Positions 37,301-58,321 of a stretch of DNA of 64,000 bases are shown in pieces (positions within the stretch are counted from its first letter, which is position 1; each line of letters begins with the position of its first letter). This DNA is from Macrostomum lignano (lineage: Eukaryota): assembly GCA_002269645.1 (NCBI GenBank), contig NIVC01001159.1, positions 38,257-102,256 of the forward strand, in the 5' to 3' direction. The position numbers and the translations under genes are program-made. The notes under the pieces are model-generated. The model was not told the origin of the DNA and searched no databases. It saw only the letters and a program-made list of their open reading frames with translations.

Positions 37301-40300
37301 CAGATTCCGGCTCCCTCATTAAGTTTTTTGTCCCAGCAGCATCATCATCAGCAGCATCATCAGCAGCATCATCAGCAGCTGCAGCAGCGCAGGCGCACCA
37401 AATCGAAACCCTCCAGCTGTTCCCTCCGGGCAGCGGTGCCCGCATTGACAGTCTGTCCGCCCGCGCTGGTCGTCTGTTTGCCGTCTCGGACAGCGCGGGC
37501 GCCGCCGTGTGGCTGGCCGAGTCGCGCTGCAATCGGCAGGCCGGCTGTGTGGCCTGCGTGTCGCTGCGGGACCCCCGCTGCAGCTGGCGGTTGGACCTGC
37601 GGGAGTGCGCGTTTGCTGCGGAGCCTGAGGGGTGAGCAGCGATTAGGGCTTGGCGTTCACCGTGACTTTAGAAGGAGGCGTTCACTGTGACTTTAGGATG
37701 CGCTCACCGTGACTTTAGAAGGAGGCGTTCACTGTGACTTTAGGATGCGCTCACCGTGACTTTAGAAGGAGGTGTTCACTGTGACTTTAGGATGCGCTCA
37801 CCGTGATTTTAGAAGAATGCGCTCACCGGGACTTTAGGATGCGCTCACCGGGACTTTAGGATGCGCTCACCGGGACTTTAGGATGCGCTCACCAGGACTT
37901 TAGGATGCGCTCACCGGGACTTTAGGATGCGCTCACCGGGACTTTAGGATGCGCTCACCGGGACTTTAGGATGCGCTCACCGGGACTTTAGGATGCGCTC
38001 ACCAGGACTTTAGGATGCGCTCACCGGGACTTTAGGATGCGCTCACCGGGACTTTAGGATGCGCTCACCGGGACTTTAGGATGCGCTCACCGGGACTTTA
38101 GGATGCGCTCACCGGGACTTTAGGATGCGCTCACCGTGACTTTAGAAGGAAGGAGGCGTTCACTGTGACTTTAGGATGCGCTCACCGTGATTTTAGAAGG
38201 ATGCGCTCACCGGGACTTTAGGATGCACTCACCGGGACTTTAGGATGCGCTCACCGGGACTTTAGGATGCGCTCACCGGGACTGTCTGATGCGTTCACTG
38301 GGACTCTAGAATGCATTCACCGGGACTCTAGAATGCATTCACCGTGACTCTAGTAGGATGCGTTCACCGTGACTTTAGGATGCGTTCACCGTGACTTTAG
38401 GATGCGTTCACCGGGACTTTAGGATGCGTTCACCGTGACTTTAGGAGGCGTTCACCGTATCTGCAGGGATCTTCGATGCATTCACTGAGTTTTAGAGGCA
38501 TTCACGGGCGGTCAAATGTAAATAAAAGGCGACTATGCGAGAGTCACAGTGATGGATCACCGCTGGAATCTCATTAAAGCTTCAAAGCTCTTCACTTTCC
38601 AGTCTGACCAACGCGTCTTCCGGGCATCACAGCGGCTGCCCCATCAGCTCAAGAGACCTGAACAGCCGTGAGTTGCATTCGGAATCTGCTATTATCATTA
38701 GTACACCTGCACTTTTACCTCTCCCCAATGCTCTGCCGGCTTTTAACTGCTGCAGGCCTGCCATCGCTCGCTCCGCCGACTCGGGGAGGCTCGCAGACCT
38801 CGGCGCTGCCGCCCCTCCTTGGAGCGTCTGGCGGCAGCCTGACCGACTCTGCGTCACTCGCGGCAGCAATGAACTCCGGCGGAGTCAGCGGAGTCCCAGT
38901 CGGCAAATTCGTGGCCGCCCTCATCGCCCTGTGCCTGCTCGGCTTCTCTGCCGGCTTCTTCTTGGGCTGCTTTGTCCGGCGCCGGCGCAACCTGCGGCGG
39001 GATGTCGGCAGAGGCGGCGCTGACGGCAGCGCAGCGGAGAGGGAGAAGTGCATCGGCGAGGTTCAGGCCAACTGCCACGGTGCTGCGGCTGCTGCGGCTG
39101 CTGCGGCTGCAGGTGAGACTGAAGGACTTGCTGGGTCTGAGGTTGTCCGGTTCTTTCAGGTTCAGGGCTAATGTCAGGGCCAGGGCCAGGGCTATTGTCA
39201 GGGCTAGGGTCAGAACTAAAGCTAGGGTCAGGACTATAGAGTCAGGGCTAGGGTCAGGGCTAGAATCAGGGCTAGTGCCAGAACTAAAGCTAGGGTCAGG
39301 GCTAGGGTCAGGGCTAGGGTCAGGGCTAGGGTCAGGGCTAGGGTCAGGGCTAGGGTCAGGGCTAGTGCCAGAACTAAAGCTAGGGTCAGGGCTAGGGTCA
39401 GGGCTAGGGTCAGGGCTAGTGTCAGAGCTAAAGCTAGTGTCAGGGCTAGGGTCAGGGCTAAAGCTAGTGTCAGGGCTAAAGCTAGTGTCAAGGCTAAAGC
39501 TAGTGTCAGGGATAAAGCTAGGGTCAGGGCTAAAGCTAGTGTCAGGGCTAAAGCTAGTGTCAGGGCTAAAACTAGTGTCAAGGCTAAAGCTAGGGTCAGG
39601 GCTAAAGCTAGGGTCAGGGCTAAAGCTAGTGTCAGGGCTAAAGCTAGTGTCAGGGCTAAAGCTAGGGTCAGGGCTAAAGCTAGTGTCAGGGCTAAAGCTA
39701 GGGTCAGGACTATAGAGTCAGGGCTAGGGTCAGGGCTAGAATCAGGGCTAGTGCCAGAACTAAAGCTAGGGTCAGGGCTAGGGTCAGGGCTAGGGTCAGG
39801 GCTAGGGTCAGGGCTAGGGTCAGGGCTAGGGTCAGGGCTAGGGTCAGGGCTAGTGCCAGAACTAAAGCTAGGGTCAGGGCTAGGGTCAGGGCTAGGGTCA
39901 GGGCTAGGGTCAGGGCTAGTGTCAGAGCTAAAGCTAGTGTCAGGGCTAGGGTCAGGGCTAAAGCTAGTGTCAGGGCTAAAGCTAGTGTCAAGGCTAAAGC
40001 TAGTGTCAGGGCTAAAGCTAGGGTCAGGGCTAAAGCTAGTGTCAGGGCTAAAGCTAGTGTCAGGGCTAAAACTAGTGTCAGGGCTAAAGCTAGGGTCAGG
40101 GCTAAAGCTAGGGTCAGGGCTAAAGCTAGTGTCAGGGCTAAAGCTAGTGTCAGGGCTAAAGCTAGGGTCAGGGCTAAAGCTAGTGTCAGGGCTAAAGCTA
40201 GTGTCAGGGCTAAAGCTAGTGTCAAGGCTAAAGCTAGTGTCAGGGCTAAAGCTAGGGTCAGGGCTAAAGCTAGGGTCAGGGCTAAAGCTAGTGTCAGGGC

Positions 40301-40893
40301 TAAAGCTAGTGTCAGGGCTAAAGCTAGTGTCAGGGCTAAAGCTAGTGTCAGGGCTAAAGCTAGTGTCAGGGCTAAAACTAGTGTCAAGGCTAAAGCTAGG
40401 GTCAGGGCTAAAGCTAGTGTCAGGGCTAAAGCTAGTGTCAGGGCTAAAGCTAGGGTCAGGGCTAAAGCTAGTGTCAGGGCTAAAGCTAGTGTCAGGGCTA
40501 AAGCTAGTGTCAGGGCTAAAGCTAGTGTCAGGGTTTTCCTCAGCAGTTGAGCGCCCGTCCTCTCACCCGCCATTACTTTTCCCCGCCGCAGGCGACGTGC
40601 CGCTGCGGCTCCGCCGGTCCCAGCACGGAGAGCGCGGCCACCAGGCGGTGTCAAACGAGTACACGGAGCACCCGCCGCAGGCAGTGGCCTCCTACGCCAC
40701 CCCGCCAGCGGTCCCAGCCGTGATGAGGATCGTCAGCAGCCACTCGTCGGCTCTGGACAGCTGGCAGAGCTGCAGCGCCGATGTGCCCGCCATCGATGAT
40801 GTTGACGAGGACGAGGAAGAGAACCCCGGGATGCACACTCGGCGCGGTCAGCCGATCGGAGACCATCGAGACAATGACTGGAGACACATCTAG
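25385..40893 (+). CDS. Transmembrane semaphorin (signal peptide, Sema, PSI, TM, cytoplasmic tail; class 1/6-like architecture), 10 exons, ~816 aa
   Basis: Manual model: 25385-25502, 25576-25666, 25755-26016, 26309-26653, 26740-26881, 34915-35355, 37304-37631, 38603-38667, 38756-39112, 40592-40893. Phases are consistent; total 2451 nt. Signal peptide MHYKIIIIFSLIVLLTIWSATSSYA. Sema motifs: YLGGFNALYRVS, GEKLYALFVEEA, TRLARICLNDPGG...TSFFKLRLIC, FYGLFS...ALCRFTL, RPRPTLC, VGT|DSGSLIK. PSI: CNRQAGCVACVSLRDPRCSW...C. TM: FVAALIALCLLGFSAGFFLGCFV followed by RRRR. Confidence 0.9.
26045..26270 (+). mobile_element. tRNA-derived SINE with CORE-like central domain (semaphorin intron 3)
   Basis: Pol III A box TAGCGTAGTGG and B box GGTTCGATTCC, then GTCCTTGAGCAAGACACTTAAC...CAGTTCACCCAGCTGTAAAATGGG, which resembles the MIR/CORE domain. 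Two more copies at 59999-60213 and 61286-61423. Confidence 0.8.
26935..27905. repeat. 25-bp minisatellite split in two by a ~470-bp unique insert
   Basis: Unit CCCTTGACATCTCGCCTTAGAATCT at 26935-27110 and 27585-27905. Confidence 0.9.
28805..29415. repeat. 45-bp minisatellite, ~13 copies
   Basis: Unit CTCCCCCTCCCGCTCTATCTATATCTAATCTCATCTCTCTGTCTT. Confidence 0.93.
30118..32275. repeat. 16-bp minisatellite, ~135 copies
   Basis: Unit GCTTGTGACTTTATGA with TCCTGTG/TCTTGTG variants. Confidence 0.97.
32810..33465. repeat. 30/31-bp minisatellite
   Basis: Unit ATCTAC(C)TCTCAGCCTATCTATGATTTCTCA. Confidence 0.93.
34540..34815. repeat. 22-bp minisatellite
   Basis: Unit TTCCATTCCAGGAATCACCCAG. Confidence 0.9.
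35375..35775. repeat. 21-bp minisatellite at the start of semaphorin intron 6
   Basis: Unit GTAGTTGCTATGCG(G/A)GAT(C/G)T(G/A). Confidence 0.9.
36238..37225. repeat. 20-bp minisatellite, ~49 copies
   Basis: Unit TCTCTCTGAGTGTCTCTCAG. Confidence 0.95.
37650..38458. repeat. 22-bp minisatellite (semaphorin intron 7)
   Basis: Unit GGATGCGCTCACCGGGACTTTA. Confidence 0.94.
39165..40533. repeat. Hexamer-based satellite (TCAGGG/CTAGGG/CTAAAG/CTAGTG) in the last semaphorin intron
   Basis: 12- and 18-bp units made of 6-mers; internal 476-bp duplication. Confidence 0.94.
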
Positions 40894-41810: not shown

Positions 41811-42539
41811 ATGAATCCAGCATTGAAGAAGCACAGCATGGCTTTAGTCAACTCTGCTATTCTCGGTCTCTGCTTGCTGAGCGTCCTGCTCAGTTTCGTT
41901 CCAGCAGGTCGCGCATGCTTTGGCAAATCTCCCAGCTTCAAGGCTACTTACCGCACTACCTTTGATCGCTCTAATCCCCGAACAGAGATGAACTTGAACA
42001 GCATCATCAACGCAAACATTAATGCCAGCAATGAGCAGCTGGCTTCGCTGCTGTATGCAAATGTCAGCAGAGATTTTCCCGGTAGTCACGTCATCGTGCT
42101 CGTCTACAACCCCATCGGCGGCGTGTCGAAGCACGAAAATCTGTTCTGCCCGTTTCAGCTGCACCTGACTCGCTATCGGGCTGAAGGGAAGAAGAACATT
42201 CATATTCAGGTGTCGAAAACAGCGTCTTCAATGCTGACAGAGCTCGGTCAGTGCTCACCACTCAAAAAGCTGCAGCGCAATAACGAGCCACCAGATGCTC
42301 AGAAGTGGATGTCCAGGCTGTGGCCTGCGTTGGACTTCTGCGGGGCTGTGAAGCTGGTTTCGGTCATAGACTATTGGACCAGCGACCTGGCTTACAAGGC
42401 CAGTCCAGGCTCTCTGGCCATCGATGTGGGCTATCACGTCTACACGAGCTACGGAGTCATGGGGCAGTCATTCAGGATTGACAAGAGGCGGACTTGGCGT
42501 ATTGAAAAGCCTGTTCAGCACATTCTTTTGTTTGGGTAG
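41811..42539 (+). CDS. Intronless secreted protein, 242 aa (233 aa from ATG 41838); family uncertain
   Basis: Non-repetitive ATG-to-stop ORF with a hydrophobic signal peptide MALVNSAILGLCLLSVLLSFVPAGRA. The segment LYANVSRDFPGSHVIVLVYNPIGGVSKH recalls the C-terminal domain of rapunzel/SE-cephalotoxin-like proteins (from memory, unverified). Confidence 0.8.
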   Translation: MNPALKKHSMALVNSAILGLCLLSVLLSFVPAGRACFGKSPSFKATYRTTFDRSNPRTEMNLNSIINANINASNEQLASLLYANVSRDFPGSHVIVLVYNPIGGVSKHENLFCPFQLHLTRYRAEGKKNIHIQVSKTASSMLTELGQCSPLKKLQRNNEPPDAQKWMSRLWPALDFCGAVKLVSVIDYWTSDLAYKASPGSLAIDVGYHVYTSYGVMGQSFRIDKRRTWRIEKPVQHILLFG

Positions 42540-43466
42540 ACGGAATGCAATATACCAATATACCAAACTACACCGTGTGTCAGGTCTGTATTCCATAATT
42601 TCCTGAGTTAAAATAGGAAATTATGATAGAAATAAGTAATACGTACTGAGCAACATGTTCTACTTTTTCCATATTATCCATATTCCAGAAAAAGGAAAGG
42701 AATAGATTTTACTTCCATTTTGCCAGAAGTCTCCATTTGTCAGCTCCACTCTGAAACCGGTGGTCAACTTTTCTCAGATCTCAGCCCCAAGTGACGCAAT
42801 TCCGACATGCACGCGACCGCCGTTCCCGTCTCAAATTACAGTTCTGCACTGACAGTAATCTACTGATAGTATAGTAATGCCACAAGCATATACTGGTGTA
42901 ACTGGCCTTACTACTGCAGTAGTTTTCGAAAATTTGTTTTTTGAACCCGACATTTTTTAATGCTAAACTATTTCACCCAAGACGCCAAGAACGAGGATGT
43001 ACGACTGATCAGCTTTAGCACTGCCTAGAGTTGTCGCGGGCTCTCGGTGGTTGGGCACTGAGCTTTGGAATTTTTCGTGCAGCGTTTCTTCAATGCACTT
43101 CACGATCTGCTTTCCCATTGTCTCGCTCTCACTCTGTGCCAAGCTTTTGTTTTGTTGCTCATCCCAGCAGCCTAGAATCGTGAAACCATGGAAAGCACCG
43201 CCTCTCTCTCTTGTCTCTCTTGTATCTCCCACGGACCACTTGGTATCTCCCAGACGTATCCCTAAACGTCTGATCGCGTACCTCCAGCTGTAGTTCCGAA
43301 GTGCTCATCAAGGAGTCACCAAGCAACCAATCCGGTTTATTTTGAGATGCGCAGGTTTTTCAGCGGCGATTGAACTTAATGTTTTCAACTAATATATTGT
43401 TTAAATATTTTTCTATTAACTACGAGCGTATTGAACTTTAAATAAAATCAATCACAGTTAGAAACT

Positions 43467-43577
43467 TTACGGAAACAATAAATAATATAAAAGATTCCTC
43501 TCGCGAATGGGAAGCAACTTCCGGCTTCCGCGACCGGCCTGAATGAAGATCAACACCTTTGGCTTTCCTTGAAGGAC
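43467..43577 (-). pseudogene. Degenerate caspase fragment with catalytic Cys>Gly (QAGRG), lacking p10
   Basis: Translates VLQGKPKVLIFIQAGRGSRKLLPIRERNLLYYLLFP*. The DNA aligns with the LEGRPKAFFIQACRGS segment at ~53890-53940. It is followed by the same 3' flank that follows the intact caspase. Confidence 0.75.
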
Positions 43578-45274: not shown

Positions 45275-45480
45275 CAATACTACAGCCACAGTACTGTTAC
45301 CTGCAAAAACCTGCTAAGGCAAGTTGGTCATCTATCTATCTTCCATCCGGAATGCTCCCATACTCAAGTCCGCCTTTCAATACTACAGCCACAGTACTGT
45401 TACCTGCAAAAACCTGCTAAGGCAAGTTGGTCATCTATCTTTCTTCCATCCGGAATGCTCCCATACTCAAGTCCGCCTTT
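45275..45480. repeat. 103-bp direct tandem duplication
   Basis: CAATACTACAGCCACAGTACTGTTACC at 45275 and 45378. Confidence 0.92.
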
Positions 45481-46106
45481 CTATCTGTTTCATAGAAAGT
45501 CTCGTCCCACATTTGGCTCATGGAAGTCTGTTTTGTCAGGCAGTTCTTTACGTTTGGTAGCAAATACTCGTTACATGCAGCTCGTGTTTCGTTTAAATGT
45601 ACTCATATATACGCATGTGAGCAGTCCTGCTCATCGGCTCACTTTTCCCTGTAATTTTTGCATCCGTCTCGTATGCATCTCAGGCGTACTGTAGCTATTG
45701 CCAACTGCTCATCAAGGAGTGACCAAGCAAAAAGCAATCTAATTTTGTCTGGATGAGCAGTATTTCAGTGGCGACAGAACTCAAACAAAATACTGGTTTA
45801 TTATTTAAAAGCTTTTGATTAACTACTTTAGTTTAGAAGAATTAGTCACAGGGTTATAAACTTTACACGGAAACGAAAAATATCATGAAAATAAAATGAA
45901 ACGATAATTGAGTACTTGAAGGTTAAGCAGATTGACTTGAGTAGACATCAGAGTCAAATAACCATTAGTCATATTCAGAAGGTAACACGATCGGTGTTTG
46001 AACAGCAGAAAAGTGTCCACATTTATCAATAAAGCTGCCAATACAAGTATATCAAATATTCCATCATTAAAGACAGCTCCGTGACATCGCCGCTACCTGA
46101 AGAAAC

Positions 46107-48311
46107 TCACAGCGGCTTCAAAGGCTCGTCGAAGAACTTCTTGTCTTCGTACCTGAAAAAGAAGTGCAGAGTATAAACTCAGAGTGTGGATTTCAAATTG
46201 CACGATAGTTCTTACTGCCCATTTATACTACAAAAATTAAAAAATTCCACTCAGAGCAACTGCAGTCAGCTGCTCAAAATTCAATGATGAGCAATAATGC
46301 TTTTCAGCGATTTCGAGCATAGGTCAGAGAGACATTCTCAGTTGCCATGGAAACTCACCCACGCAGCAGCTCAGCCAGCTCGCTGTTTTCCGTCTGTGTG
46401 GCCAAATCCAGCGCAGTCCTGTCGTCTCTGTCCTTCAGGCTCCAATCCGCCCCTGAGTCCAGCAGAACCCGACCGACTGCGGCGGCGGTAGCGGGGGGCG
46501 CAATGATGGCTGCCAGCATGAGGGGAGTCAATTCACAGTATCCCCGATCAGTCCTGGCATTGGCGGAGGCTCCGGCAGCCAGCAGTGCGGAGGCTGCGGC
46601 AGAATTGCCACCGAAGCCTGCCCAGTGCAGGCAGCTGTCAGACCTTGAATCCACACAGGTGGGGTCACCCAGCTGCACCAGCTGCTCCCACAGAGCCTCA
46701 TTACTGCACGAGCTGTTCCGAGCTGCACACATCAACGCGGTGACACCACATCTGTCAGGCAGGTCGCAGCTGCTGCGGGTCGCCGCTCGCCGCAGTCCAG
46801 CCCAGTCGCCGGCCTCAGCCAGCCGCTTCATTTCCTTTCGATCGACCTTCTCCTGCAAAGGCGAGCGGGAAATTTGAGCACCGCTGCTCTGCTGCAGCTG
46901 CATCGGCACCGCAGATGCCGCTCACCTGAGCTGTCAGGCCAGAGATATAGGCATATTTTTCCACCACCAGCCGCATCTCCCTGCAACCGTAAAATGAGCA
47001 GCGAATTTGCAATTTTATTTATCAGGCAACTACCGTTGCCAAAATAGAATTTACTTTAGTAGGATGAAATTTTCATGATAAATTTAGCAAATACGAGTAG
47101 AAAATCCTAATTATCTGAGCTGCTCGCAGATGAAGATTTTAGGAGAACTGCAGCAGCTCCGCAACAATCAGCATTGGCGAGAGCGCCTATGACTTCTCAC
47201 ACGCAGCTCATTTTCCATTTCTGCAGCACGAGTTTCCTTCCATTTCACAATGTCTCACAAAGCACTCACGCACAGCCTCCCAGTTCTCCATCTGCAGCTC
47301 GACCCACACACTCTCACTGCACACCGAGGCCCTACAGCTTCCATTCTCGACTGAGATCAACCGGACCCCCATTGGCTGAGAGGCTCCCGCCCATCAAGCA
47401 GTCAGCCAGAGACAAGCTCAGCTGACTGGCTCTGATTGGCTGGCCTGAGACTGCAGCTCTGGCCACCCCAGCCGAATGCTGCAAAAATTGATGGACACAG
47501 CAGCGAACTGCTCACTCACCGCTCGATGTAGCTGGCCAGCTCTGAGTAGCCGCTGAGTCTCGCCAGGTCCGACGCCGTCCGACCCTCGCAATTCTGCAGT
47601 CCGAGCAACCGCGACCTCTTCGAGTTTCCGTGCTGCAAGCATTCATTAAACTTCAACTGCCTGAGCAGGTGCAGCAGGTGCTTGGCGCATTTCCAGCTGC
47701 CAGTCCGCGCCGCCTCCATCAGCGGAGTGGCGCCGTTGTCGTTCCGCAGCCACTTCGCATCGAACCACAGCAGCGTCAGCAGCCGCAGGTGGTCCCGCCG
47801 GGCTGCCAGGTGCGCAGCCGTGTCGCCGTTCGCGTCAGCCGCCTTGGGGTTCGCGCCCAGCTTAAATAAGTACAAGATGCACTTTTCAGTGTGCACGGGA
47901 GTCTCAGGAGCGTCGGCCACCAGCATGAGGACGGTCCGACGATTTGCATCAGCGCTGGTGACCAGCTGGCGCGTTGCCAGCCGCCGCACCTGGCCGAAGT
48001 CACCTCGGATGACGTCGTGGGCGAGAGTCTGGAGATCGGCTGGTGAGTCTCCGACGCTTGCCCGGTTGCTGGGGTCCGGCTGAGTGAGTTCCTGCAACTG
48101 TAATTAAGCACTAAAGCTGCACATTGAAACATGTGAGTGAGAACCAAAGATATTTTTCAAATGGATTGCTTTAACTCACAAAAAATAATATTTCAAACAA
48201 AAGAATGCTACAAAACTTACATTCTTACAAATAATCACCCTATGTACAATATAAGGTAAAACTTACCTTGTAATCAGAATAGTATATCACCTTAGAGGCC
48301 GCACTGCCCAT
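46107..48311 (-). CDS. Ankyrin-repeat-only protein (~405 aa), paralog of the ankyrin-caspase without the caspase exons
   Basis: Exons 48311-48267 (MGSAASKVIYYSDYK), 48097-47520, 46980-46926, 46852-46359, a possible 12-nt microexon at 46227-46216, and 46152-46111, with read-through to TGA at 46109-46107. ANK motifs: GDTAAHLAA, GATPLMEAA, GVTALMCAA, TPLMLAA, DRTALDLA. The 3' end is uncertain. Confidence 0.75.
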
Positions 48312-48599
48312 TTTTAAAGACTCGACCAGTTAATCAACTGGAAAATCAAAATGCATGAGCAGCTGCGTCAACTCAACAGATTATATAGCGGCCTCAGAAG
48401 ACATTGTCAGAGAGATGCACTGCCTGCGCCTCATAGGCTGAATGCAAACCCAGTGTCTCTGTTTCTGATTCTCTGCCGTACAGAATGCATACTACTCACG
48501 GCAGTAGAAGTTAGATTGCAGATATTATTTTCACTTTCGCATAATACTTTTTTCTGAATTTCTCTGTTGTAATACATGGCATACAATGATAAAACAACA

Positions 48600-49350
48600 A
48601 CAACAAAATACGTGCTCCGCGTCACAGTGCGCGCCTCAAAGGCAGGTCGCGAATGAACGCCCCGCCGCCGACCGAATCTGGGGCGCCGGCGTTAGCCAGC
48701 AGGCAGTCGACGAATCGCCGAGTGCGGGCTTGCCCCCCCCCACCGGTAGGGTGCCTGCAGCGTCATTAGCAGCACCTCCTGCATCGGTTGTGGGAAATAC
48801 GTTCGGCTCGGATGATGTGGAATGCAAGCTGGAGTCGCCGACGGCGCAACAGGTCGCTTGGACGAACCAGGCCGTCATGGTGATAGAAAGCTGCGTTGGT
48901 CACTCGCTCGTTGCCGATCCTGAAGGCAGCGCTTAGCAGGTCAGCGTGCGCCGCGTCAACTTGTTGCTTGCGCAACTCCATCAGCGTCCAGGTCTCGGCG
49001 TTGTACAACAGGACGGTCTCGATCACCGCCTGGAAAAACGCCACCCTCTGGCGGTCAGGTAGGCCCTTGGATTGCAAGACTGCCCTCACAGAATAAAAGG
49101 CAGCCCATGACGTCAAGAACTAGACCGCCGAGGAAGTCGAACTGCTGACAACACGAAAGCTCCGTCGCCGGGCCATCTGCGCCTTGACTCATAAATGCAA
49201 CCTCGATGTCGTCCGGCACGCAGGGCACAACGGTTTTCTGTGTATTGACCACCAGACCGACAGCTTGTACAGTTGTTTCTGGGCGCCCTCGACCGTTCAG
49301 GACAGCAGGACGAGATCGTCAGCGTAGCCAAGCACGCTGAGCCGCCTCTA
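48600..49350 (-). mobile_element. 5'-truncated, decayed RTE-type non-LTR retrotransposon
   Basis: RT motif LGYADDLVLLS followed by an in-frame TGA, frameshifts, and the RTE-typical C-terminal stretch AFFQAVIETVLLYNAETWTL...RRRRLQLAFHIIR. A short (TTG)n run near 48595 may be the tail. Confidence 0.85.
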
Positions 49351-51424
49351 TCGTTGACGTCACCGCAACAGTTTTTTTTAAAATAATAAACGATAAACAA
49401 GAATACGTGTCTATTGTGTTGAGAATGCACCGTGCCTGGAGTCGTGTGACCGTGTAGAGAGGTGGGTGGATGGACAAGAGACGGGGAGGGAGAGAAGAAT
49501 GGCAAGCCGAAAAGATGAGAGCGAGGGAGAAGAATTCTGATGTACCAAATCCTATAATAACTATTATACTATCTAAAAGTGCAAGTTTGGTGAAAGCAGG
49601 TTTCTAGTTGTGAAATGAGAGAGCATTATATTAAAGCCAGCCTGCAAAAGCTTATCGAAGAAACTACCTGGCATATTATTCTGCATTAACTTCATGGCCT
49701 AACTAAAAATTATTTTTATAAGCTTCGTTTTATAATTGTGTGCTGTAAAACGGTTGCTTACAGAAAAATACGTCTTCTAAATCTGGCTTTACTCAAGTTT
49801 ACACGGCTTTCAGGAATTAACAAAATATAATTTCATTCTACTGCAATATAAAATGATGGCGAAGTTTGTTTATTATCCACAGGATTTAAAAAACTACGCC
49901 ATCAAGAGCAAAAAACGACTGTAAACTCAATGATTGTACGCTCGTATAGAATTGTTTGGAGATGCAATCAACCGTAGAAACCTGTTAACACATGGATCTC
50001 ACTTATGTAAAAAATGCAATACCCAGTTGACATCGTTTTAAAGAGAATTAATTTGACTATTTGAGACGATAATTACATGTACGTCGTACGCCACTCCTCT
50101 GCAGAGGACTTGAATCTGAGACTGGGATTAAAGGTGACCCTTAATTACCTCCCGTCGCCATCTTTGGTTGTTATCATCTCGGAAGCGTCAGCGCTGGAGG
50201 TCGCGGTTCATCACCGGATGATTGCGTCACCAACACCGCGTTTCAGCAGCCACTCTTGCATCATGCGCATCTTTTATTAGTACATGGATATAACTGCCTG
50301 TCTGCCTGTTTGTCTTGCTTTATTCTTTTTTAAAGGGGCGCAACGTTTTAATTGCGCTACAACTTTTCAGCAGTTTCTAGAAGAGTCTGTAAGGTGCTCT
50401 AGAATCTCCTTAGCAATACTTGCTAAATGTCATCTTGTACTTTTAGTATGCATCTCTATTGTATATCTCCAAGAGGCGGGCAGGAGGGGGCATGTCCCTC
50501 AGTAAATGCTTCGGGGGGACATTTCAATGCTTTGTCCCCCCGCACCAGCTCTGTGACCTGTTATGTAAATCAAGAATTTTGTTTCAGGACACCAAAATGC
50601 GTATCTGCGGCGCTAAAATGAGTGACTGAGGTGCCAAAATGAGTGACTCAAGTGGAAAATTCTTCACGCAGGAAAAGAGACCAGTGTATCTCCTAAAGAA
50701 ATAGTTCTATCGGATCAATGCCCAGCTCTATCAGTAAATAATTACACCAATATTCTTTCAAAGAAGTTGCGTAACTCGCTGCTTATCTCGTTTCAGAAGA
50801 CATCAAACCCAGTACACAAAAACTGCCAACCTGACTTAACAATAGGCTGAGCTGCTTCTACGAGTAAATCTAAAACTGTCCTTCATTCAAAACCAAAGAA
50901 ATTCATTTTGCCACTATCTATGCGCTCGTAAATATAGAAACTGAAACACGCAAATGCAGCAATGCTGTTTATTGAGACGAAGGGGCACATGGCACGCCAC
51001 AGCAGCTCCAGATTAAAGATTAAATGCAGACTGAAAAATAAAGGCAGAGAGACGTACAAGTATGACCGTGCGAACTCAGAAAAGAGTAAAATGCAGGGCT
51101 GAAACAGAATGCGGGCTGTGGTTGATGTGTGGGTGAGAAACTTCAAAAGAAAAGAGCGGAAAAGAGAGGGAGTCTATCTAGCAATATTTTTGAAACTGAA
51201 AAAACAGTTTCTGATAAATTTAGAAAACGAAAGCCAGAGCGTCTATAGACGGTGAGTGGAATATTAAAATAGACGATTAGGCATAAACAGAGGTCTTCAA
51301 AACAAAATTAAGTTGCCAAATCTTTTACACGCTACTTATGTTAGAGTCGCAGTTCGTTGCCCTGCATTTTGATGCAGTATCCAGATTGAATATCCAGAGC
51401 ACAGAATATCACCCAGAATGGTCA

Positions 51425-51570
51425 TTCACAGTGACAGGAGCAATGTGTGAACAGCAGTGACCGGAACAGTATGTGAACAGCAGTGACAGGAGCAGTGTGT
51501 GAACAGCAGTGACAGGAGCAGTGTGTGAACAGCAGTGACAGGAGCAGTGTGTGAACAGCAGTGTGTGAAC
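51425..51570. repeat. 24-bp minisatellite, ~6 copies
   Basis: Unit GTGTGAACAGCAGTGACAGGAGCA. Confidence 0.9.
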
Positions 51571-53528
51571 GGCAGAATCGCCAGTCCTGGCTGCATGGTG
51601 CAGGCAACTGTTAGCCAATACAATCGCCAAATCCACTTATTGGTCAATGCAAATCTTCAAAATCAAAGAAATATACAGGACATCTATAGCTAGGTGACAT
51701 TGTTCCCAACTCTTGTGCATAATTGCTTTCGTTAGCGGTTCTAAAAAACAATTCTTCAACAGCTGTAGAATAATTGAGTCTAAAAATTTCAATAAATAAG
51801 CATGAATAAGAGTTCCGTTGAAAAATTTATATGCTAGTCTCACTTATAGTAAATACAAAGTTTGTCTGATAATGAATAATGAATTATGATAACGAAATAC
51901 AACGTAAAGACGAGCTACTCACTAAGCAACATGTTACATTTTCCACCCCCGACACGTGCGGCCAACTTTTCTCACATCTCAGCGGTTTTCCTCTCAACTG
52001 TGGGTGATGCAGCTTCCGTCACAATAAGTCCCCAGTTTATTAACCTGATGAGGAGAGACAGGAGAGCTATGACCACAGAGTTGGATTAAGCTCGACCACT
52101 TTCAGTTCTCATGCAGACCTCATGAACGGGTCTCATAAGCAAAAACGTTCTGAAATTAAAAATTGCATGTATGAGTAGATCTCATCTGAGAGTTTTTTTC
52201 TCTATTTGATATCTATCTCAATTGCTTCGATCCTTTGGCCCTCTTAATACATGTATACGTATTATACAGGCTGCCAATCGGGACCCAAAAACCATGCTAC
52301 TTGTAAATTACTGTATCAAGAGCGAGAACGAGAATTTAATCACCTGTAGCACTGCCTGGAGTTGTTTCTTGGGCTCTCGGTGGTTGGGTGCTCATATATG
52401 GAAATTTCCTTTCTCTTGCTCTCTCACTCTGTCAAGCTTTTGTTTTATTGCTCATCCCAGCAGCCTATAAAACCGCGAAAAGCACCGCCTATCTGTATGC
52501 ACCTGGCTCAATGCTAGCTTCTACTTATAAGAACATCGAACTTTTTGCCCTATCGTCCATTTATTTCTTGCATTTTCTGCAAGCCGTTTGCATTTTGCAG
52601 CAAATTTGCGAGCCGTACTTGTCCAGCTAGTGTTTCGTTTAGCTATGAGCGTGAGCAGTCCTGCTCACGGCTCTCTTCATCAGTTTCTCGTACATTTGCA
52701 CGTGTGTTAATTAACAGAATTCATCAATACACCCTCGCTTTGACCACTGACCAGATGTTCCACCTTTTCTGTGTAATCCTTCGTCTCGTCTCTTGTTTAT
52801 ATCTACGCATATTCCTAAACGTTCTAGTTGTCAATTGCCCATAAATGAGTCACCAAGCAAACAACCAGTCCGATTTTGTTTGTAATGTGCAGTTTTTTAG
52901 AGGCGATAAACCTTTAACTACGAGTAACTACCAATTTATTGTACAGAAAACTTGTGATTAATAATTGAACTTTAAATAAGGTAGACACGGTGTTAGAAAC
53001 TTTAAATATAGGAACACAAAAAACAATTAAAAAATCAACCGTAACTGAGTAGCTAAAAATTTAAAGCAGATTAACTTGAGTAGACGTTGGAGCAGATCAA
53101 CAAGTAGCTTACGTGAGCTCTTGGGCTGAAGGGGCAACCCAGCAGTCGGGAAAGCAAAAACTTGAATAAATAATAAAAAAACACGTCGGATCAAAAAAAA
53201 CTTATAAATATAAAAAAATTGCGGCTAAATATGGATAGGCACGGCACACAAAACAGAAGGCTGCAAGTACAGGAAAAGTTCGGTTGCTTGAGTAAACTGG
53301 AGGACAGTGTTTCAGCAGCAAGAACGATTGTTTGTCATAAGATAAACATATCGATTACAAATTTTTAGCTAATTTTCGTGGCTACTGGGCTACATTTGCT
53401 TTGGGTTACAAAGCTGCTACTTTCAATTCTAATTCTAACTCTTCTCAAAGCTACTACTTAGCACGTTGCTGAGTGAATATATAGTGTTGACGTCTCAGAA
53501 ACCGCTAAACAATTTCATTGAGCAGCTT

Positions 53529-54762
53529 TTAAACTTTCTGAGCTTTTTCTGGATCGAAGCTAACAAGTCGTGAAAGCTGGTCGACCTTCTGTGGCACAAC
53601 ATGGTACAGGTTGTTTTTCACCCGAACAGGGTTTTCCTGCAAGTGGCCGCTCACCTTGGTCATGATGGTACTTAGGTCGAGCTCACGGAAGTTTTTCTCG
53701 ATGAAATCGCAAACAGTCTGCACGTACAGCGAACCCGTGTCGATGTTTCTAAAGGCGGCTGAGCCTGGAGTGTTGGCGTAGCAGAGCAGAAAGTCGCTCT
53801 CTGCAGGACGGACCGCGGTGTTGTACACCGGAGCGGGTGCTTCGTCCGTTTCCTCGCGAGAATTGGGAGCAACAACAGCGCGGTCGAGACGGCTTCCGCG
53901 ACAGGCCTGGATGAAGAACGCCTTCGGCCTGCCTTCAAGTCTGCGGCAGACAGAGCTCTGCGATGCGATGACAGTGGCGGTGAGGTTTTTCGTCTTAGAA
54001 ACATGGTATACTGTCTAGTCTCCGCTTCTTTGATGAATTAGATTGAAGGCGTGAGACACGCCTGTTTCAGAACTCAATTCAGAACTCAAAATGAGATTTC
54101 GGCTCTCTCATGCGCTTGTATATTTTTCCGCTAGCGTTCGCTGGCTTCAAGCCCATACCTGTAAAGCGCAAATCCCCCAACATGTCTATGAAAATATTTT
54201 ACGTTAATAAAATGCACTACATGTATTTGTCATCAGTGCCACAAAAGTCTACACAGACTTTTGTAAATGCGAAAACGAGTTCCTACACTCAATATTACCT
54301 TTCGGCTCAATACTATACATTTCTATTCAGAGCCCTTTTTAATATTCCTGTCCTTGCTCATATCAAGATAAAAAACTATCAACAGGATATTCTCGGCGAT
54401 AGCTTACCTGGAACCTGTCTGTCAGCTTTCGAATTTCGTAGGGACAGCCGTCCCTACCGTAGATGCAGTCGTGGCTGCCGTGCGCCATCAGGAAGCAGAC
54501 AAAGCTGCCATGCTCGCCAAGGTCCGGTGACTTTTTTATCTCATGGAGGAAATCATCCACCTGCTCAGCGGTAAGATCCTCTTTTACCTTGACGATGAAG
54601 CGCAGACTCTCGAATACCTGTTTCACTCGTTCAACATCACGAACTGAACCTTTACGCTCGGTATGACTGAATGTGATGTCACTTCCGGAGTCGTACTTGC
54701 TGATGTTGATGATCAGACAGTAGCCTTGCGGGTCCGTCACTGGATAGAAGTCTCCCTCCACC
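53529..54762 (-). CDS. Caspase (peptidase C14A) catalytic domain exons of the ankyrin-caspase
   Basis: GYCLIINISKY, ERKGSVRD (S1 Arg), FVCFLMAHG (catalytic His), GRPKAFFIQACRG (catalytic Cys; QACRG at 53895-53909), and p10 PAESDFLLCYANTPGSAAFRNIDTGSLYVQ. One phase-0 intron at 54407-53994. Confidence 0.95.
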
Positions 54763-57700
54763 CTGGAATACAGTGAATGCTCAATACATTTTTTACGAGC
54801 TCGTACTTTAACAGCGCAAAACATAAAATTTAGTATCACCTTGACAGCTGATGGCGAGCGGTTTTGACACGCATGGCTCCTCCGAAGTCTCCAAAAGTTC
54901 TTTTAAGTGAAAAACAACAATTTGACTATGCTGTTACTGAATATTTGTGGCATGCTTTGCCTGATGACTAAATAAAACTTCGACTCACAGATCTGGTTCC
55001 TCATCGCTTGGTATCTCGTCATCAGCATGGTCTGTAAAAACTTTTCGTCTGAAAAGGTAAAAAAGCCATGCAGTTTTCGTAGCTGTGTGCTGTAGCTGTG
55101 TGTTGTAGCTGTGTGCTGTAGCTGTGTGCTGTAGCTGTGTGCTGTAGCTGTGTGCTGTAGCTGTGTGCTGTAGCTGTGTGCTGTAGCTGTGTGCTGTAGC
55201 TGTGTGTGCTGTAGCTGTGTGTGCTGTAGCTGTGTGCTGTAGCTGTGTGCTGTAGCTGTGTGCTGTAGCTGTGTGCTGTAGCTGTGTGTGCTGTAGCTGT
55301 GTGCTGTAGCTGTGTGTGCTGTAGCTGTGTGCTGTAGCTGTGTGTGCTGTAGCTGTGTGCTGTAGCTGTGTGTGCTGTAGCTGTGTGTGCTGTAGATGTG
55401 TGCTGTAGCTGTGTGCTGTAGCTGTGTGCTGTAGCTGTGTGTGCTGTAGCTGTGTGCTGTAGCTGTGTGTGCTGTAGCTGTGTGTGCTGTAGCTGTGTGC
55501 TGTAGCTGTGTGTGCTGTAGCTGTGTGTGGTGTAGCTGTGTGTGCTGTAGATGTGTGCTGTAGCTGTGTGCTGTAGCTGTGTGCTGTAGCTGTGTGTGCT
55601 GTAGCTGTGTGCTGTAGCTGTGTGTGCTGTAGCTGTGTGCTGTAGCTGTGTGCTGTAGCAGTGTGCTGTAGCTGTGTGTGCTGTAGCTGTGTGTGCTGTA
55701 GCTGTGTGCTGTAGCTGTGTGCTGTAGCTGTGTGTGCTGTAGCAGTGTGCTGTAGCTGTGTGCTGTAGCAGTGTGCTGTAGCTGTGTGCTGTAGCTGTGT
55801 GTGCTGTAACTGTGTGTGCTGTAGCTGTGTGCTGTAGCTGTGTGCTGTAGCTGTGTGTGCTGTAGCTGTGTGCTGTAGCAGTGTGCTGTAGCTGTGTGCT
55901 GTAGCAGTGTGCTGTAGCTGTGTGTTGTAGCTGTGTGCTGTAGCAGTGTGCTGTAGCAGTGTGCTGTAGAAGTGTGTGCTTAGTGTGCAGTGTCTGCGCT
56001 TGAGCTGAAGAAACTCACCGTGGCTCCGAAGACTCGTCAAAGTACTTCTTGCCTTCGTACCTGAAATTGATTTGGATAGTTTGAATCAAGACTTTGGCTG
56101 ATATTTTGTTTTCACGTGAGTATTTAGGAACTCAACAGCAGATTTCTGATTTCAAGATGGGATTCAGGGTCTCGAAACAAACTCATTTTTTACATAGATT
56201 TTATATTAAGCCGTAAATTTTGAATTTTATCTTTAAATTGAAGATTTTGCTTAGATTTATCAGCAATAAAGTTATAAAGTTATCAACTGGCAATCTGCAG
56301 TCAAACTGCACTGCAAACTTCCTCAATGCAGCTCAGTCAGTCCCTGCTGCCCATTTGGACTACAATAATTAAAAAATTCCCACTCAGAGCAACTGCCGTC
56401 AGCTGCTCAATATTCAATCATAAATTACAGCAATAGTGTTTATCAATCGGGATAAATCAAAGTCAAAGAGAAATTCTCAGTCGCCATGGAAACTCACCCA
56501 CGCAGCAGCTCAGCCAGTTCGCTCTTTCCCTTCTCTGTGGCCAAATCCAGCGCAGTCTCGCCGTTTATGTCCTTCAGGCTCCAATCCGCCCCTGAGTCCA
56601 GCAGAACCCGACCGACTGCGGCGGCGGTGGCGGGGGGCGCATGGATGGCTGCCTGCATGAGAGGCGTAGATTCCATTCCACTCGTGGCATTTGCGGAGAC
56701 TCCGACAGCCAGCAGAGCGGAGGCTGCGGCAGAATTTCCAGCGCTGGCTGCGTGGTGGAGGCAACTTTTATCATAAAAATCTGCCAATGTAGGGTCTCCC
56801 ATATGCACCAGCTGCTCCCACAGAATCTCATCACAGCAGGACCTGTTTTGAGCTGCCCACATCAACGCGGTGCAACCATATTGGTCAGGCAGGTCGCAGC
56901 TGCTGCGGGTCGCCGCTCGCCGCAGCGCCGCCATTAAGCCCTTATCGGCCAGCCGCCGCAGTTCCTGTCGATCCGACTTCTCCTGCAAAGGCGAGTGGGA
57001 AATTTGAGCACAGCTGCTCAGTTGCAGCTGCATCGCCACTGCAGATGCCACTCACCTTGGCTATCAGGCCGGAGATAAAGCTATGTCTATCCACAACCAG
57101 CCGCATCTCCCTGAAACAGCAGAATTGAGCAGCGAATTTGCAATTTTCTCAAATCTGGCAACTCACATAGCTATATTATAATAAAATTTTATGATAATTT
57201 TCATGATATTTGTCAACAGAAATTCTAAATAATGTGAGCTGCTCGCGAATGGACTTTCCAAGAGCCCTCAAGCACAGCCTCCCAGTTCTCCATCTGCAGC
57301 TCAACCCACACACTCTCACTGCACACCGAGGCCCTACAGCTTCCATTCTTGACTGAGATCAACCCGCATCCCGTTGGCTGGAAGGCAGCTCTCGCCCATC
57401 AAGCAGTCAGCCAGAGACAAGCTCAGCTCAGCGAACTGCTCACTCACCGCTCGATGTAGCTGGTCAGCTCTAAGTGGCCGTTGCGCCTCGCCAGGTCCGA
57501 CGCCGAGTGTAAATTGCGATCGCACAGTTTGAGTAGCTCCGACCTCTTCGAGTCTTCGTAGATAGTGGACTCATTGAACCTTCTCTGCCTGAGCAGGTGC
57601 AGCAGGTGCTTGGCGCATTTCCAGCTTCCAGTTCGCGCCGCCTCCATCAGCGGAGTGGCGCCGTTGTCGTTCCGCAGCCACTTCGCATCGAACGATAGCA

Positions 57701-58321
57701 GCGTCAGCAGCCGCAGGTGGTCCCGCCGGGCTGCCAGGTGCGCAGCCGTGTCGCCGTTCGCGTCAGCCGCCTTGAGGTTAACGCCCTTCTCAAATAAGTA
57801 CAAGATGCACTTTTCAGTGTGCACGGGAGTCTCAGGAGCGTCGGCCACCAGCATGAGGACGGTCCGACGATCTGCATCAGCGCTGGTGACCAGCTGGCGC
57901 GTTGCCAGCCGCCGCACCTTGCCGAAGTCACCTCGGCTGACGAGCTGGGCGAGAGTGTGGAGATCGGCTGGTGAGTCTCCGACGCTTGTACGGTTGCTGG
58001 GGTCCGGCTGAGTGAGTTCCTGCAACTGCAATGGAGGCACCTGGCTTTTAGAACCAGAAAAAGGGTATAGAACTCCGGGGTATTGTCGTTTTTTATCCTG
58101 TTGAATGAGGTTAAGGATTACACGTCGAAATGGTCGAGGTAGATTCCATGGAAGAGAAATACGTGTCCATTATGAGCGCTACTGTCGCGACTTATAATAA
58201 GGATACGGTCTAAAGCTACAGACCTACAGTTTATAGTTCTTGTTTTACTGCAAATGTACCAACAGCTAATAGTAATTTATTAGCTCACCGTGTTATTCAG
58301 AGAGGAGGCCGCACTGCCCAT
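53529..58321 (-). CDS. Ankyrin-repeat caspase: myristoylation-type N-terminus, two ANK clusters, acidic linker, caspase p20/p10; 9 exons, ~715 aa
   Basis: Exons 58321-58289, 58040-57448, 57110-57056, 56982-56498, 56060-56019, 55048-54989, 54899-54840, 54762-54408, 53993-53529. All introns are GT-AG and the phases chain without a stop; total 2148 nt. The exon 2 acceptor could also be 58025 or 58019 (same phase). Confidence 0.78.
55079..55980. repeat. 13/15-bp minisatellite in an ankyrin-caspase intron
   Basis: Unit GCTGTGTG(TG)CTGTA. Confidence 0.95.

What the first reader, a model, noticed from the sequence alone, without database searches (positions are those of the whole stretch)
46107..48311. 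ANK-only paralog has lost all caspase exons but kept an intact frame
Seen: exon-for-exon match to the ANK-caspase up to the 42-nt YEDKKFFDEPLKP exon. About 160 bp later the sequence (GTCTACTCAAGTCAATCTGCTT, ~45930-45955) matches the flank downstream of the caspase stop (~53065-53087), so the linker and caspase exons were deleted. The remaining ~400 codons have no stops or frameshifts despite many substitutions, and splice sites are preserved. Inference: a maintained dominant-negative or adaptor protein.
Basis: partly seen in the sequence, partly recalled or inferred. Interest (0 to 1): 0.7.

Follow-up and report, generated by a model that had tools for sequence, protein, structure and literature searches.

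The report
Caspase-less ankyrin copy beside ANK-caspase gene

Summary
On the minus strand, 48311-46105 is a five-exon, 405-codon ankyrin-only ORF (gene A). It matches exon for exon the first five exons of an intact ANK-caspase 10 kb upstream (gene B, 58321-53529, 697 aa, MAHG and QACRG present). The organism is Macrostomum lignano.

A lacks about 2.9 kb of B. The gap starts 14 nt into intron 5, exactly where a 13-nt minisatellite begins, and ends 444 nt into the 3'UTR. A's ORF ends at the TGA of the orphaned donor (CT|GTGAGT). A keeps B's promoter blocks, TATA box, MGSAAS start and the aligned AATAAA. No caspase or kinase exon lies elsewhere in the window, except a 54-nt dead relic (43521-43574).

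"Maintained" is not proven:
- Pairwise dN/dS is about 1 across the whole family.
- A's own branch gives about 0.5 (p = 0.018).
- There are no frameshifts, although the introns carry many indels.
- Gene conversion among paralogs and the unknown age of the deletion weaken all of these.
- The counterpart locus in another assembly has no RNA-based gene model.

A belongs to a Macrostomum-specific family that joins one hypervariable double-ANK module to either a caspase or a MAP3K-like kinase. The closest analogue is the human CARD-only decoys beside CASP1. The dominant-negative role is plausible but untested.

The parts
48347..48508 (-). Gene A promoter region. It has blocks shared with gene B: 48508-48479 (30 nt, 29/30), 48408-48392 (17/17), the TATA box TATATAATCTGTTG at 48387-48374 (14/14), and CTGCTCATGCATTTTG at 48362-48347 (16/16).
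   Evidence: The two block motifs searched in the whole window occur only upstream of A and B, and blastn of the A and B promoter regions found nothing in L002. Intron 1 next to them is unalignable (47% identity).
48267..48311 (-). Gene A exon 1, encoding MGSAASKVIYYSDYK. It fits the N-myristoylation pattern M-G-x-x-x-S. The first 18 nt are identical to B exon 1.
47520..48097 (-). Gene A exon 2 (578 nt): the first ANK block. It is 90% identical in nucleotides to B exon 2, and the 1-kb stretch that contains it is about 92% identical to the ANK-kinase gene K1.
   Evidence: Pfam Ank_2 and Ank_4.
46926..46980 (-). Gene A exon 3 (55 nt): the inter-block linker, which is hypervariable in the family.
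46359..46852 (-). Gene A exon 4 (494 nt): the second ANK block. It carries two small in-frame insertions totalling 9 nt relative to B. Most hypervariable positions lie here.
46105..46152 (-). Gene A exon 5 (42 nt, YEDKKFFDEPLKP), then the orphan donor read through as CTG TGA. The stop codon is at 46107-46105.
   Evidence: The donor plus 14 nt (46110-46097) is 14/14 identical to B 56018-56005.
45947..46096 (-). 150-nt junction filler with no detectable homolog. It replaces B 56004-53086.
45617..45946 (-). Retained distal 3'UTR and flank of gene A. It holds AATAAA at 45802-45797, aligned with B's AATAAA at 52940-52935, and a conserved 25-nt block at 45730-45706.
53529..58321 (-). Gene B, the intact ANK-caspase parent type. 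Nine exons: 58321-58289, 58025-57448, 57110-57056, 56982-56498, 56060-56019, 55048-54989, 54899-54840, 54762-54408, 53957-53529. The catalytic His motif MAHG is at 54488-54477 and QACRG is at 53909-53895.
   Evidence: It is about 99% identical to M. lignano P0010.
55079..55976 (-). 13-nt minisatellite (AGCACACAGCTAC, about 65 copies) that fills B intron 5. It is absent from A. The same unit fills intron 5 of ANK-kinase paralogs.
52828..53085 (-). B distal 3'UTR and flank, homologous to the A flank and the C flank.
42988..43574 (-). Relic C. A 54-nt caspase active-site fragment at 43574-43521 encodes LQGKPKVLIFIQAGRGSR (Cys changed to Gly, one extra codon, a stop just upstream). It is followed by a third copy of the 3' flank.

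Best explanation
SHOWN. Gene A is a complete-looking transcription unit that encodes only the N-terminal module of a Macrostomum lignano ANK-caspase.
- It arose as a tandem duplicate of a B-like gene (myristoylation-type MGSAAS start, double ANK module, acidic linker, caspase-8-like protease).
- One deletion of about 2.9 kb then removed everything from the start of the intron-5 minisatellite to 444 nt past the caspase stop. A unique 150-nt filler sits at the junction.
- Intron 5 is phase 2 with a GTGAGT donor, so the unspliced donor reads CTG TGA. The ORF closes for free after 405 codons.
- The ancestral poly(A) signal now lies about 300 nt downstream.
- The predicted product folds confidently as two ANK-repeat blocks joined by a helical linker, with a disordered N-terminal tail.

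INFERRED.
- The gene is probably still transcribed from the promoter blocks it shares with B.
- The product is probably membrane-tethered like B.
- Lacking the protease, it can only bind. The most likely activity is as a non-catalytic competitor or regulator (a prodomain-only decoy) for whatever ligand or partner the ANK modules of this caspase/kinase family engage. This parallels the CARD-only proteins beside CASP1.
- Whether selection maintains it, or it is merely young, is unresolved.
For: Gene models and splice sites.
Domains: Pfam gives ANK only in A, and ANK plus Peptidase_C14 in B.
Deletion map. The breakpoint is at the start of the minisatellite.
B-type ends: the promoter, exon 1 and 3' flank are shared with B and absent from the ANK-kinase cluster L002.
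No other effector exon in the window.
A's terminal branch has 26 nonsynonymous and 18 synonymous changes (omega about 0.5, binomial p = 0.018). B has 68:16.
The only coding indels between A and B are two in-frame ones in 1160 nt, against 11 indels in about 600 nt of aligned introns.
A changes only 4 of 130 family-invariant columns. That is typical of intact members, which change 0-10.
In columns invariant in nine independent paralogs, A has 10 nonsynonymous changes, against K1 9, K2 6 and B 20.
AlphaFold2 model: pLDDT 89.6, pTM 0.88. Foldseek gives double-ANK architectures.
B's protease is caspase-8-like, which is an initiator type.
Precedent: CARD-only decoys arose by duplication next to CASP1 (PMC3775265).
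Against: Pairwise dN/dS is about 1 for every pair in the family, including clearly intact genes, so it cannot single out A.
The absence of stops is not significant: P = 0.27 for 44 random substitutions.
Gene conversion or ectopic exchange is active here:
- A's ANK module, introns included, is closer to ANK-kinase genes on another contig (92% and 86%) than to B.
- The counterpart A' in assembly GCA_002269645.1 is 4% divergent in exon 2 and 7.6% in intron 2, inside flanks that are 1.2-1.7% divergent.
Conversion from intact paralogs could therefore keep the frame open without selection on A.
The age of the deletion is unknown. The orphan donor plus 14 nt is 14/14 identical to B, which hints that the deletion is young.
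No protein in 5.8 billion clusters is more than 79% identical to A's C-terminal half.
The RNA-seq-based annotation of Mlig_3_7 (PMC5730564) has a model for B' but none for A'.
Caspase loss is recurrent in the cluster: relic C, and a nonsense codon in B'. This fits plain birth-and-death decay.
A and B differ at nearly all hypervariable ANK positions, so direct competition for B's ligand is doubtful.
Confidence: 0.45

Rival explanations
1. A is a young, unconstrained remnant (a pseudogene in the making) in a birth-and-death multigene family. The deletion killed the gene's function. The ORF, splice sites and promoter look intact only because too little time has passed and because gene conversion from intact paralogs keeps overwriting the ANK module. 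Relic C shows the later stage of the same decay.
For: Family-wide dN/dS is about 1.
P(no stop) is 0.27.
A is a mosaic, with an ANK module closer to K1 and K2 than to B.
The haplotype difference is concentrated in exon 2 and intron 2.
The orphan donor plus 14 nt is 14/14 identical to B.
There is no gene model at A' in an RNA-based annotation that does model B'.
No matching protein exists in the database.
Neighbouring relic C, and a nonsense codon in B' of the other assembly.
M. lignano carries large recent duplications, giving redundancy (PMC5730564).
Against: A's terminal-branch omega is about 0.5 (p = 0.018), the lowest of the four genes compared.
There is no frameshift despite a high indel density in the introns.
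Discrete promoter blocks and the poly(A) signal are preserved, while intron 1 is unalignable and the flanks are about 70% identical.
There is no excess of changes at invariant columns.
Confidence: 0.4
2. A is not ANK-only. The intact exon-5 donor is still used and splices to an exon that was not recognised. That exon could be a short C-terminal exon in 46100-42000, or an effector exon beyond the window.
For: The donor GTGAGT and the next 8 nt are perfectly preserved. Family members have introns of up to about 25 kb (K1 in L002).
Against: tblastn with the full ANK-caspase and a full ANK-kinase finds no further caspase or kinase coding sequence anywhere in the 46 kb downstream, or elsewhere in the window, except the 54-nt relic.
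Splicing into that relic would be out of frame and would end after about 9 codons.
The ancestral poly(A) signal lies only about 300 nt after the stop.
Confidence: 0.08
3. The missing caspase part is an assembly artefact: a collapse at the minisatellite intron.
For: The 5' breakpoint coincides with a 900-bp minisatellite, which is a region that is hard to assemble.
Against: The 3' side of the junction is unique sequence. It is followed by a flank only 69% identical to B's, so it is not a mis-join of B reads. A's exons differ from B's by 10-20% throughout.
Confidence: 0.02

Closest known systems
Human CARD-only proteins (CARD16/COP, CARD17/INCA, CARD18/ICEBERG) next to CASP1; more loosely c-FLIP next to CASP8/CASP10
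   Same: They are tandem duplicates of a caspase gene that keep only the recruitment prodomain and lie beside the parent gene. They act as non-enzymatic decoys (PMC3775265). A has the same origin and the same predicted architecture.
   Different: The prodomain here is a double ankyrin-repeat module with a myristoylation-type start, not a death-fold domain.
Truncation is by one 2.9 kb deletion, with a stop donated by an orphan splice donor.
No expression, binding or inhibition data exist for A.
A's recognition surface differs from that of its neighbour B.
[quoted passage not shown]
   Same: Gene B, A's parent type, is a flatworm caspase with an N-terminal ankyrin prodomain. Its protease is nearest to caspase-8-type initiators. 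The paper likewise places ANK caspases near the DED caspases.
   Different: The paper describes ANK caspases as restricted to parasitic flatworms. For M. lignano it reports only a caspase with a kinase-like pro-domain. Here the ANK-caspase is in free-living M. lignano.
A itself has no caspase domain.
Orthology of B to the parasite ANK-caspases was not tested.
M. lignano ANK-kinase paralogs (for example BOX15_Mlig015152g1 = P0003, and K1 and K2 on NIVC01000754.1)
   Same: They share the same ANK module (75-84% protein identity to A), the same exon structure, and the same minisatellite in intron 5.
   Different: They carry a STE/MAP3K-like kinase after intron 5. They have a different first exon (MAQR..., with no MG start). 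Their promoters and 3' flanks are unrelated to A's.
Designed ankyrin repeat proteins (DARPins) and tankyrase ARC clusters
   Same: Both show a two-block ANK architecture. Family variability is concentrated at ANK positions 2, 3, 5, 10, 13 and 14. Apart from position 10, these are among the positions randomised in DARPin libraries (own knowledge; variability).
   Different: This is a resemblance of fold and of variability pattern only, not a relationship by descent.

Membership tests
Ankyrin-repeat proteins (Pfam Ank_2/Ank_4/Ank/Ank_5) | Significant matches to ANK repeat profiles, and an ANK solenoid fold | tested here: met
   Ank_2 E = 1.2e-24, with further ANK families above their cut-offs. 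AlphaFold2 model pLDDT 89.6. Foldseek hits are ANK proteins.
Caspases (Peptidase_C14) / platyhelminth ANK-caspases | A caspase p20/p10 domain with catalytic His and Cys (QACRG) | tested here: not met
   A has no Peptidase_C14 match. No caspase exon lies downstream. Gene B meets the feature (E = 1.6e-45, MAHG and QACRG). So A is a derivative of the family, not a member.
Platyhelminth ANK-caspases | An ankyrin prodomain N-terminal to the protease, in a clade near DED/caspase-8-type caspases | tested here: inconclusive
   B has the architecture, and its best non-Macrostomum hits are caspase-8-like at 31-37% identity. No phylogeny with the parasite ANK-caspases was made.
Prodomain-only caspase decoys (COP/INCA/ICEBERG type) | Derived by duplication of a caspase gene and located beside it | tested here: met
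   A lies 5.2 kb downstream of B. Promoter, exon 1, exons 2-5, introns and 3' flank are homologous.
Prodomain-only caspase decoys (COP/INCA/ICEBERG type) | The ORF retains the prodomain only | tested here: met
   The 405-codon ORF ends at the donor-site TGA directly after the last prodomain exon.
Prodomain-only caspase decoys (COP/INCA/ICEBERG type) | The protein is expressed | not testable with these tools
   No transcript data could be reached. Indirect evidence is negative: there is no database protein, and no gene model at A' in the RNA-based annotation.
Prodomain-only caspase decoys (COP/INCA/ICEBERG type) | Binds the parent caspase or its activator and inhibits activation | not testable with these tools
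   This needs co-immunoprecipitation and activity assays.
Unprocessed pseudogene | Disabling mutations (stops, frameshifts, lost splice sites or lost promoter) in what remains | tested here: not met
   None was found in 1.2 kb of CDS, in 8 internal splice sites, or in the TATA and initiator blocks. The loss of the caspase part is itself a disabling event for the ancestral function.
Unprocessed pseudogene | Neutral evolution (dN/dS about 1) after the disabling event | tested here: inconclusive
   Pairwise omega is about 1, but that holds family-wide. Terminal-branch omega is about 0.5, p = 0.018. A versus A' in exon 2 gives 0.47 on 23 differences. The age of the deletion is unknown, and gene conversion is present.
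N-myristoylated proteins | N-terminal M-G-x-x-x-[S/T], with no charged or bulky residue at position 3 | tested here: met
   MGSAASK in A and MGSAASS in B. The pattern is judged from own knowledge. The modification itself cannot be tested here.

The most novel reading that the evidence does not exclude
A may be one product of a Macrostomum-specific, rapidly diversifying sensor family. In this reading, a double-ANK recognition module with DARPin-like hypervariable surface positions is coupled through a minisatellite-filled phase-2 intron to interchangeable effectors: a caspase-8-like protease or a MAP3K-like kinase. The unstable intron would be the joint at which effectors are swapped or lost. 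Loss there automatically yields a terminated ANK-only protein, that is, a hard-wired decoy or regulator. This would be an invertebrate cell-death or innate-immunity receptor repertoire of a new architecture.
Probability: 0.2. Interest if true: 0.8.

Novelty: new variant of a known kind. Interest (0 to 1): 0.45.

Why it matters
If A is expressed and maintained, it would be the first prodomain-only regulator described for the flatworm ANK-caspases. Their activation mechanism is unknown, and A would show convergence with the primate CARD-only decoys, reached by a different molecular route.

The locus also shows three other things:
- ANK-caspases exist in a free-living flatworm.
- They share their ANK module with a kinase subfamily.
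- The module varies mainly at canonical ANK binding positions.

Together these make a testable case for a lineage-specific sensor family in an animal where RNAi and transgenesis work.

If A is only a remnant, it is still a clean example of minisatellite-associated domain loss in a birth-and-death family.

Tried and rejected
1. Hidden effector exon. tblastn of full B and of the ANK-kinase P0003 against the whole window found nothing beyond B itself and a 54-nt relic. The hidden-exon idea is rejected within the window.
2. Homology of the 150-nt junction filler to B's deleted segment or to anything else. The scores equal the shuffle mean and there is no second copy.
3. Is the shared 3' flank a genome-wide repeat? 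It is not found in 60 kb of another family cluster, and only three copies occur in the window. It is treated as part of the local duplication unit.
4. Pairwise dN/dS as a test of maintenance. It is uninformative, because omega is about 1 for all pairs.
5. A stop-codon survival simulation was not significant, at 0.27.
7. I tried to reach the rest of contig NIVC01003438.1, to see whether A' shares the deletion, through the neighbouring ORF 41811-42539. There was no record and no homolog.
8. Rfam scan of the window gave no hit.
9. The GenBank ANK-only model P0001 as evidence of a conserved ANK-only gene. It is a chimeric model across two ANK-kinase genes that ends in intron-5 read-through, so it is not an ortholog of A.
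10. A special meaning for the in-frame TGA at the donor. It follows automatically from phase 2 plus GTGAGT, and the same is true of A's introns 2 and 4. It is not treated as an adaptation.
Full report
WHAT IS THERE

The finding lies on the minus strand of a eukaryotic window. Reading 48311 down to 46105 gives a five-exon gene (gene A) with canonical GT/AG at every junction. The exons are 48311-48267, 48097-47520, 46980-46926, 46852-46359 and 46152-46111. The last exon ends in phase 2 at an intact donor (CT|GTGAGT). If that donor is not spliced, the frame reads CTG TGA, which gives a 405-aa protein ending ...YEDKKFFDEPLKPL.

Pfam finds only ankyrin repeats in A (Ank_2 E = 1.2e-24).

Ten kilobases upstream, 58321-53529 encodes a nine-exon, 697-aa protein (gene B). 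It has the same ANK module, then an acidic linker and a Peptidase_C14 domain (E = 1.6e-45) with MAHG and QACRG. Exons 1-5 of A and B correspond one to one, with identical phases.

Both proteins start MGSAAS, which fits the N-myristoylation pattern (own knowledge of the motif).

THE DELETION

blastn of the A region against the window aligns these segments:
- A 48508-48295 to B's promoter and exon 1 (73%).
- A 48104-46207 to B exons 2-4 and their introns (80-91%).
- A 46158-46097 to B exon 5 plus the first 14 nt of intron 5 (87%; the 14 intronic nt are 14/14).
- A 45946-45698 to B 53085-52828 (69%, E = 6e-18).

B 56004-53086 has no counterpart in A. This segment holds the 13-nt minisatellite (about 65 copies), both linker exons, both caspase exons and 444 nt of 3'UTR. 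In A it is replaced by 150 nt with no detectable relative.

A three-way alignment shows that A's AATAAA (45802-45797) is aligned with B's (52940-52935). The 5' breakpoint is exactly where the minisatellite array begins in B and in the paralogs.

NO HIDDEN EFFECTOR

tblastn with full B and with an ANK-kinase paralog finds no other caspase or kinase coding sequence in the window. The one exception is a 54-nt fragment at 43574-43521. It encodes LQGKPKVLIFIQAGRGSR: the active-site Cys is replaced by Gly, there is one extra codon, and a stop lies just upstream. A third copy of the 3' flank follows it directly. This is a dead relic (C) of a further family member, not an exon of A.

ORGANISM AND FAMILY

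All close protein relatives are from Macrostomum lignano. P0010 (BOX15_Mlig007583g1) is the counterpart of B. The ANK module occurs in three settings:
- with a caspase (B, P0037, P0042);
- with a kinase (P0002-P0004, P0006) whose nearest solved relatives are ASK1/MAP3K and PAK;
- alone, in several gene models.

A second contig (L002) carries two ANK-kinase genes, K1 and K2. They have the same exon structure as A and B, and the same minisatellite fills their intron 5.

The GenBank ANK-only model P0001 is not an ortholog of A. It is a chimeric model across K1 and K2 that ends in the read-through TGA of exon 5's donor.

A's promoter, first exon and 3' flank are shared with B but are absent from L002.

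The in-frame TGA is an automatic consequence of a phase-2 intron with a GTGAGT donor. The same holds for A's introns 2 and 4.

ANK-caspases are a known flatworm-specific group. They were reported as parasite-restricted, and for M. lignano only a kinase-prodomain caspase was reported (PMC11463336). B's protease is nearest to caspase-8-like sequences.

IS A MAINTAINED?

Evidence for constraint:
1. Counting changes private to each of A, B, K1 and K2 gives, as nonsynonymous:synonymous, A 26:18 (omega about 0.5, binomial p = 0.018 against 0.745), B 68:16, K1 20:10 and K2 22:8.
2. A-B introns 2-4 carry 11 indels in about 600 aligned nt, and intron 1 is unalignable. The 1160 aligned coding nt carry only two indels, both in frame.
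3. A changes 4 of 130 columns that are invariant in the other members, within the range of intact genes. In columns invariant in nine independent paralogs, A has 10 nonsynonymous changes, against 9, 6 and 20 for K1, K2 and B.
4. Promoter blocks of 30, 17, 14 (TATA) and 16 nt are identical or nearly identical to B's, within otherwise diverged sequence.
5. The AlphaFold2 model is confident (pLDDT 89.6, pTM 0.88). It shows two ANK blocks joined by a helix, and the first 17 residues are disordered.

Evidence against, or neutralising:
1. Pairwise dN/dS is about 1 for all pairs, including intact genes.
2. The absence of stops is not significant (0.27).
3. A's ANK module, introns included, is closer to K1 and K2 on another contig (92% and 86%) than to B.
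4. The A counterpart in assembly GCA_002269645.1 (L001) differs by 4.0% in exon 2 and 7.6% in intron 2, inside flanks that differ by 1.2-1.7%. It then runs into unrelated sequence. Exchange among paralogs is therefore ongoing and could keep the frame open without selection on A.
5. The age of the deletion is unknown, so the constraint signals may predate it. The perfectly preserved orphan donor hints that the deletion is recent.
6. No database protein exceeds 79% identity to A's C-terminal half.
7. The RNA-seq-based Mlig_3_7 annotation (PMC5730564) models B' but has nothing at A'.
8. Caspase loss recurs locally: relic C, and a GAG-to-TAG nonsense codon in exon 8 of B' in the other assembly. 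There the ANK exons are identical to the window, but exons 7-8 carry 4 nonsynonymous changes, 1 nonsense and 1 synonymous change.

FAMILY PATTERN

Variability is extremely uneven. Long invariant stretches alternate with positions that hold 6 to 10 or more residue types among 13 sequences. Of the 22 most variable positions, 18 lie in the loops before the first helix of a repeat or at ANK positions 2, 3, 5, 10, 13 and 14, mostly in the second block.

In 33 columns classed as hypervariable from nine independent paralogs, dN is 0.55-1.1 and omega 1.1-2.5. In 205 invariant columns, dN is 0.035-0.07 and omega 0.55-0.8. dS is also raised in the hypervariable class, and the counts are small.

This looks like diversifying selection on a binding surface over a scaffold homogenised by conversion. 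It also means that A and B probably recognise different partners.

VERDICT

The structural story is solid: tandem duplication, a minisatellite-associated deletion of the effector, a free stop codon and a reused poly(A) signal.

A is best described as a structurally complete ANK-only derivative of an ANK-caspase. It is analogous in origin to the CARD-only proteins beside CASP1 (PMC3775265). Whether it is a maintained regulator (my estimate is about 0.45) or a young remnant in a birth-and-death family (about 0.40) cannot be settled from sequence alone. The specific dominant-negative role is untested.

The wider family is the more novel lead: a hypervariable double-ANK module with caspase or kinase effectors joined at an unstable intron.

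Noticed in passing
window 42988-43574 (-): Relic C. A 54-nt caspase active-site fragment (QACRG changed to QAGRG, one extra codon, upstream stop) is fused almost directly to a third copy of the 3' flank, with AATAAA degraded to AATATA. Further homology links 42988-43207 to B 52325-52494. It is a nearly erased third family member.
   Followed up: partly
L001 (NIVC01003438.1, GCA_002269645.1) about 8505-8859, against window 54762-54408: The counterpart of gene B in the other M. lignano assembly has a premature stop (GAG to TAG, E499*) before the catalytic His and Cys. This explains the 498-aa GenBank model P0010. Exons 1-6 are 0/1253 nt different from the window, while exons 7-8 carry 4 nonsynonymous changes, 1 nonsense and 1 synonymous change. 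It is a second, independent loss of the protease, or a sequencing error.
   Followed up: partly
L001 14699-15965 and beyond, against window 48311-47107: The counterpart of gene A in that assembly has an identical exon 1, but 4.0% divergence in exon 2 and 7.6% in intron 2, inside flanks that are 1.2-1.7% divergent. From L001 15965 on it runs into at least 2.7 kb of unrelated repeat-rich sequence. No gene is annotated there. This suggests ectopic conversion and an insertion in one haplotype or homeolog.
   Followed up: partly
window 55079-55976; L002 about 38220-38990 and about 50160: The same 13-nt minisatellite (AGCACACAGCTAC) fills intron 5, the junction between the ANK module and the effector, in the ANK-caspase B and in ANK-kinase genes on another contig. 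A's deletion starts exactly at its first repeat. It may be a hot spot for effector loss or swapping.
   Followed up: partly
L002 (NIVC01000754.1) 93-1495, 11788-39955, 48012-51689: Another cluster holds the 3' end of a more distant ANK-caspase followed by two ANK-kinase genes. The GenBank model BOX15_Mlig007725g10 (P0001, labelled ANK-only, 404 aa) is chimeric across the two kinase genes, 36 kb apart. The kinase-prodomain caspase reported for M. lignano in PMC11463336 might likewise be a fused model of neighbouring family genes. That last point is speculation and was not checked.
   Followed up: partly
window 43302-43326, 45706-45730, 52836-52860 (-): A 25-nt block, TTGCTTGGTGACTCCTTGATGAGCA, lies about 70 nt downstream of the poly(A) signal. 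It is conserved (0-3 mismatches) in all three copies of the 3' flank, including the dead relic, and is better conserved than the rest of the flank. Its function is unknown.
   Followed up: no
A protein residues 163-169, 215-219, 260-271, 295-306, 327-343, 368-380 (window exons 2-4): Family hypervariability is concentrated at canonical ANK binding positions (2, 3, 5, 10, 13, 14), mostly in the second ANK block. In these columns omega is above 1. B's ANK module has the fastest terminal branch (68 nonsynonymous to 16 synonymous).
   Followed up: partly
window 41811-42539 (+): A 242-aa ORF with a signal-peptide-like N-terminus lies just downstream of the cluster. It has no exact record and no homolog at E <= 1e-10 in the protein collection.
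   Followed up: partly
window 810-4616, 6712-7648, 9490-10437, 15582-16277, 21391-22318, 35120-35899, 39710-40893, 58774-59550: The window is unusually rich in long minisatellite arrays. One is a 21-nt unit repeated 37 times about 450 nt upstream of gene B's start codon. These arrays create long spurious ORFs in several frames.
   Followed up: no
window 45275-45481: A 103-nt unit in two near-identical tandem copies (99%) lies between gene A's 3' flank and relic C.
   Followed up: no
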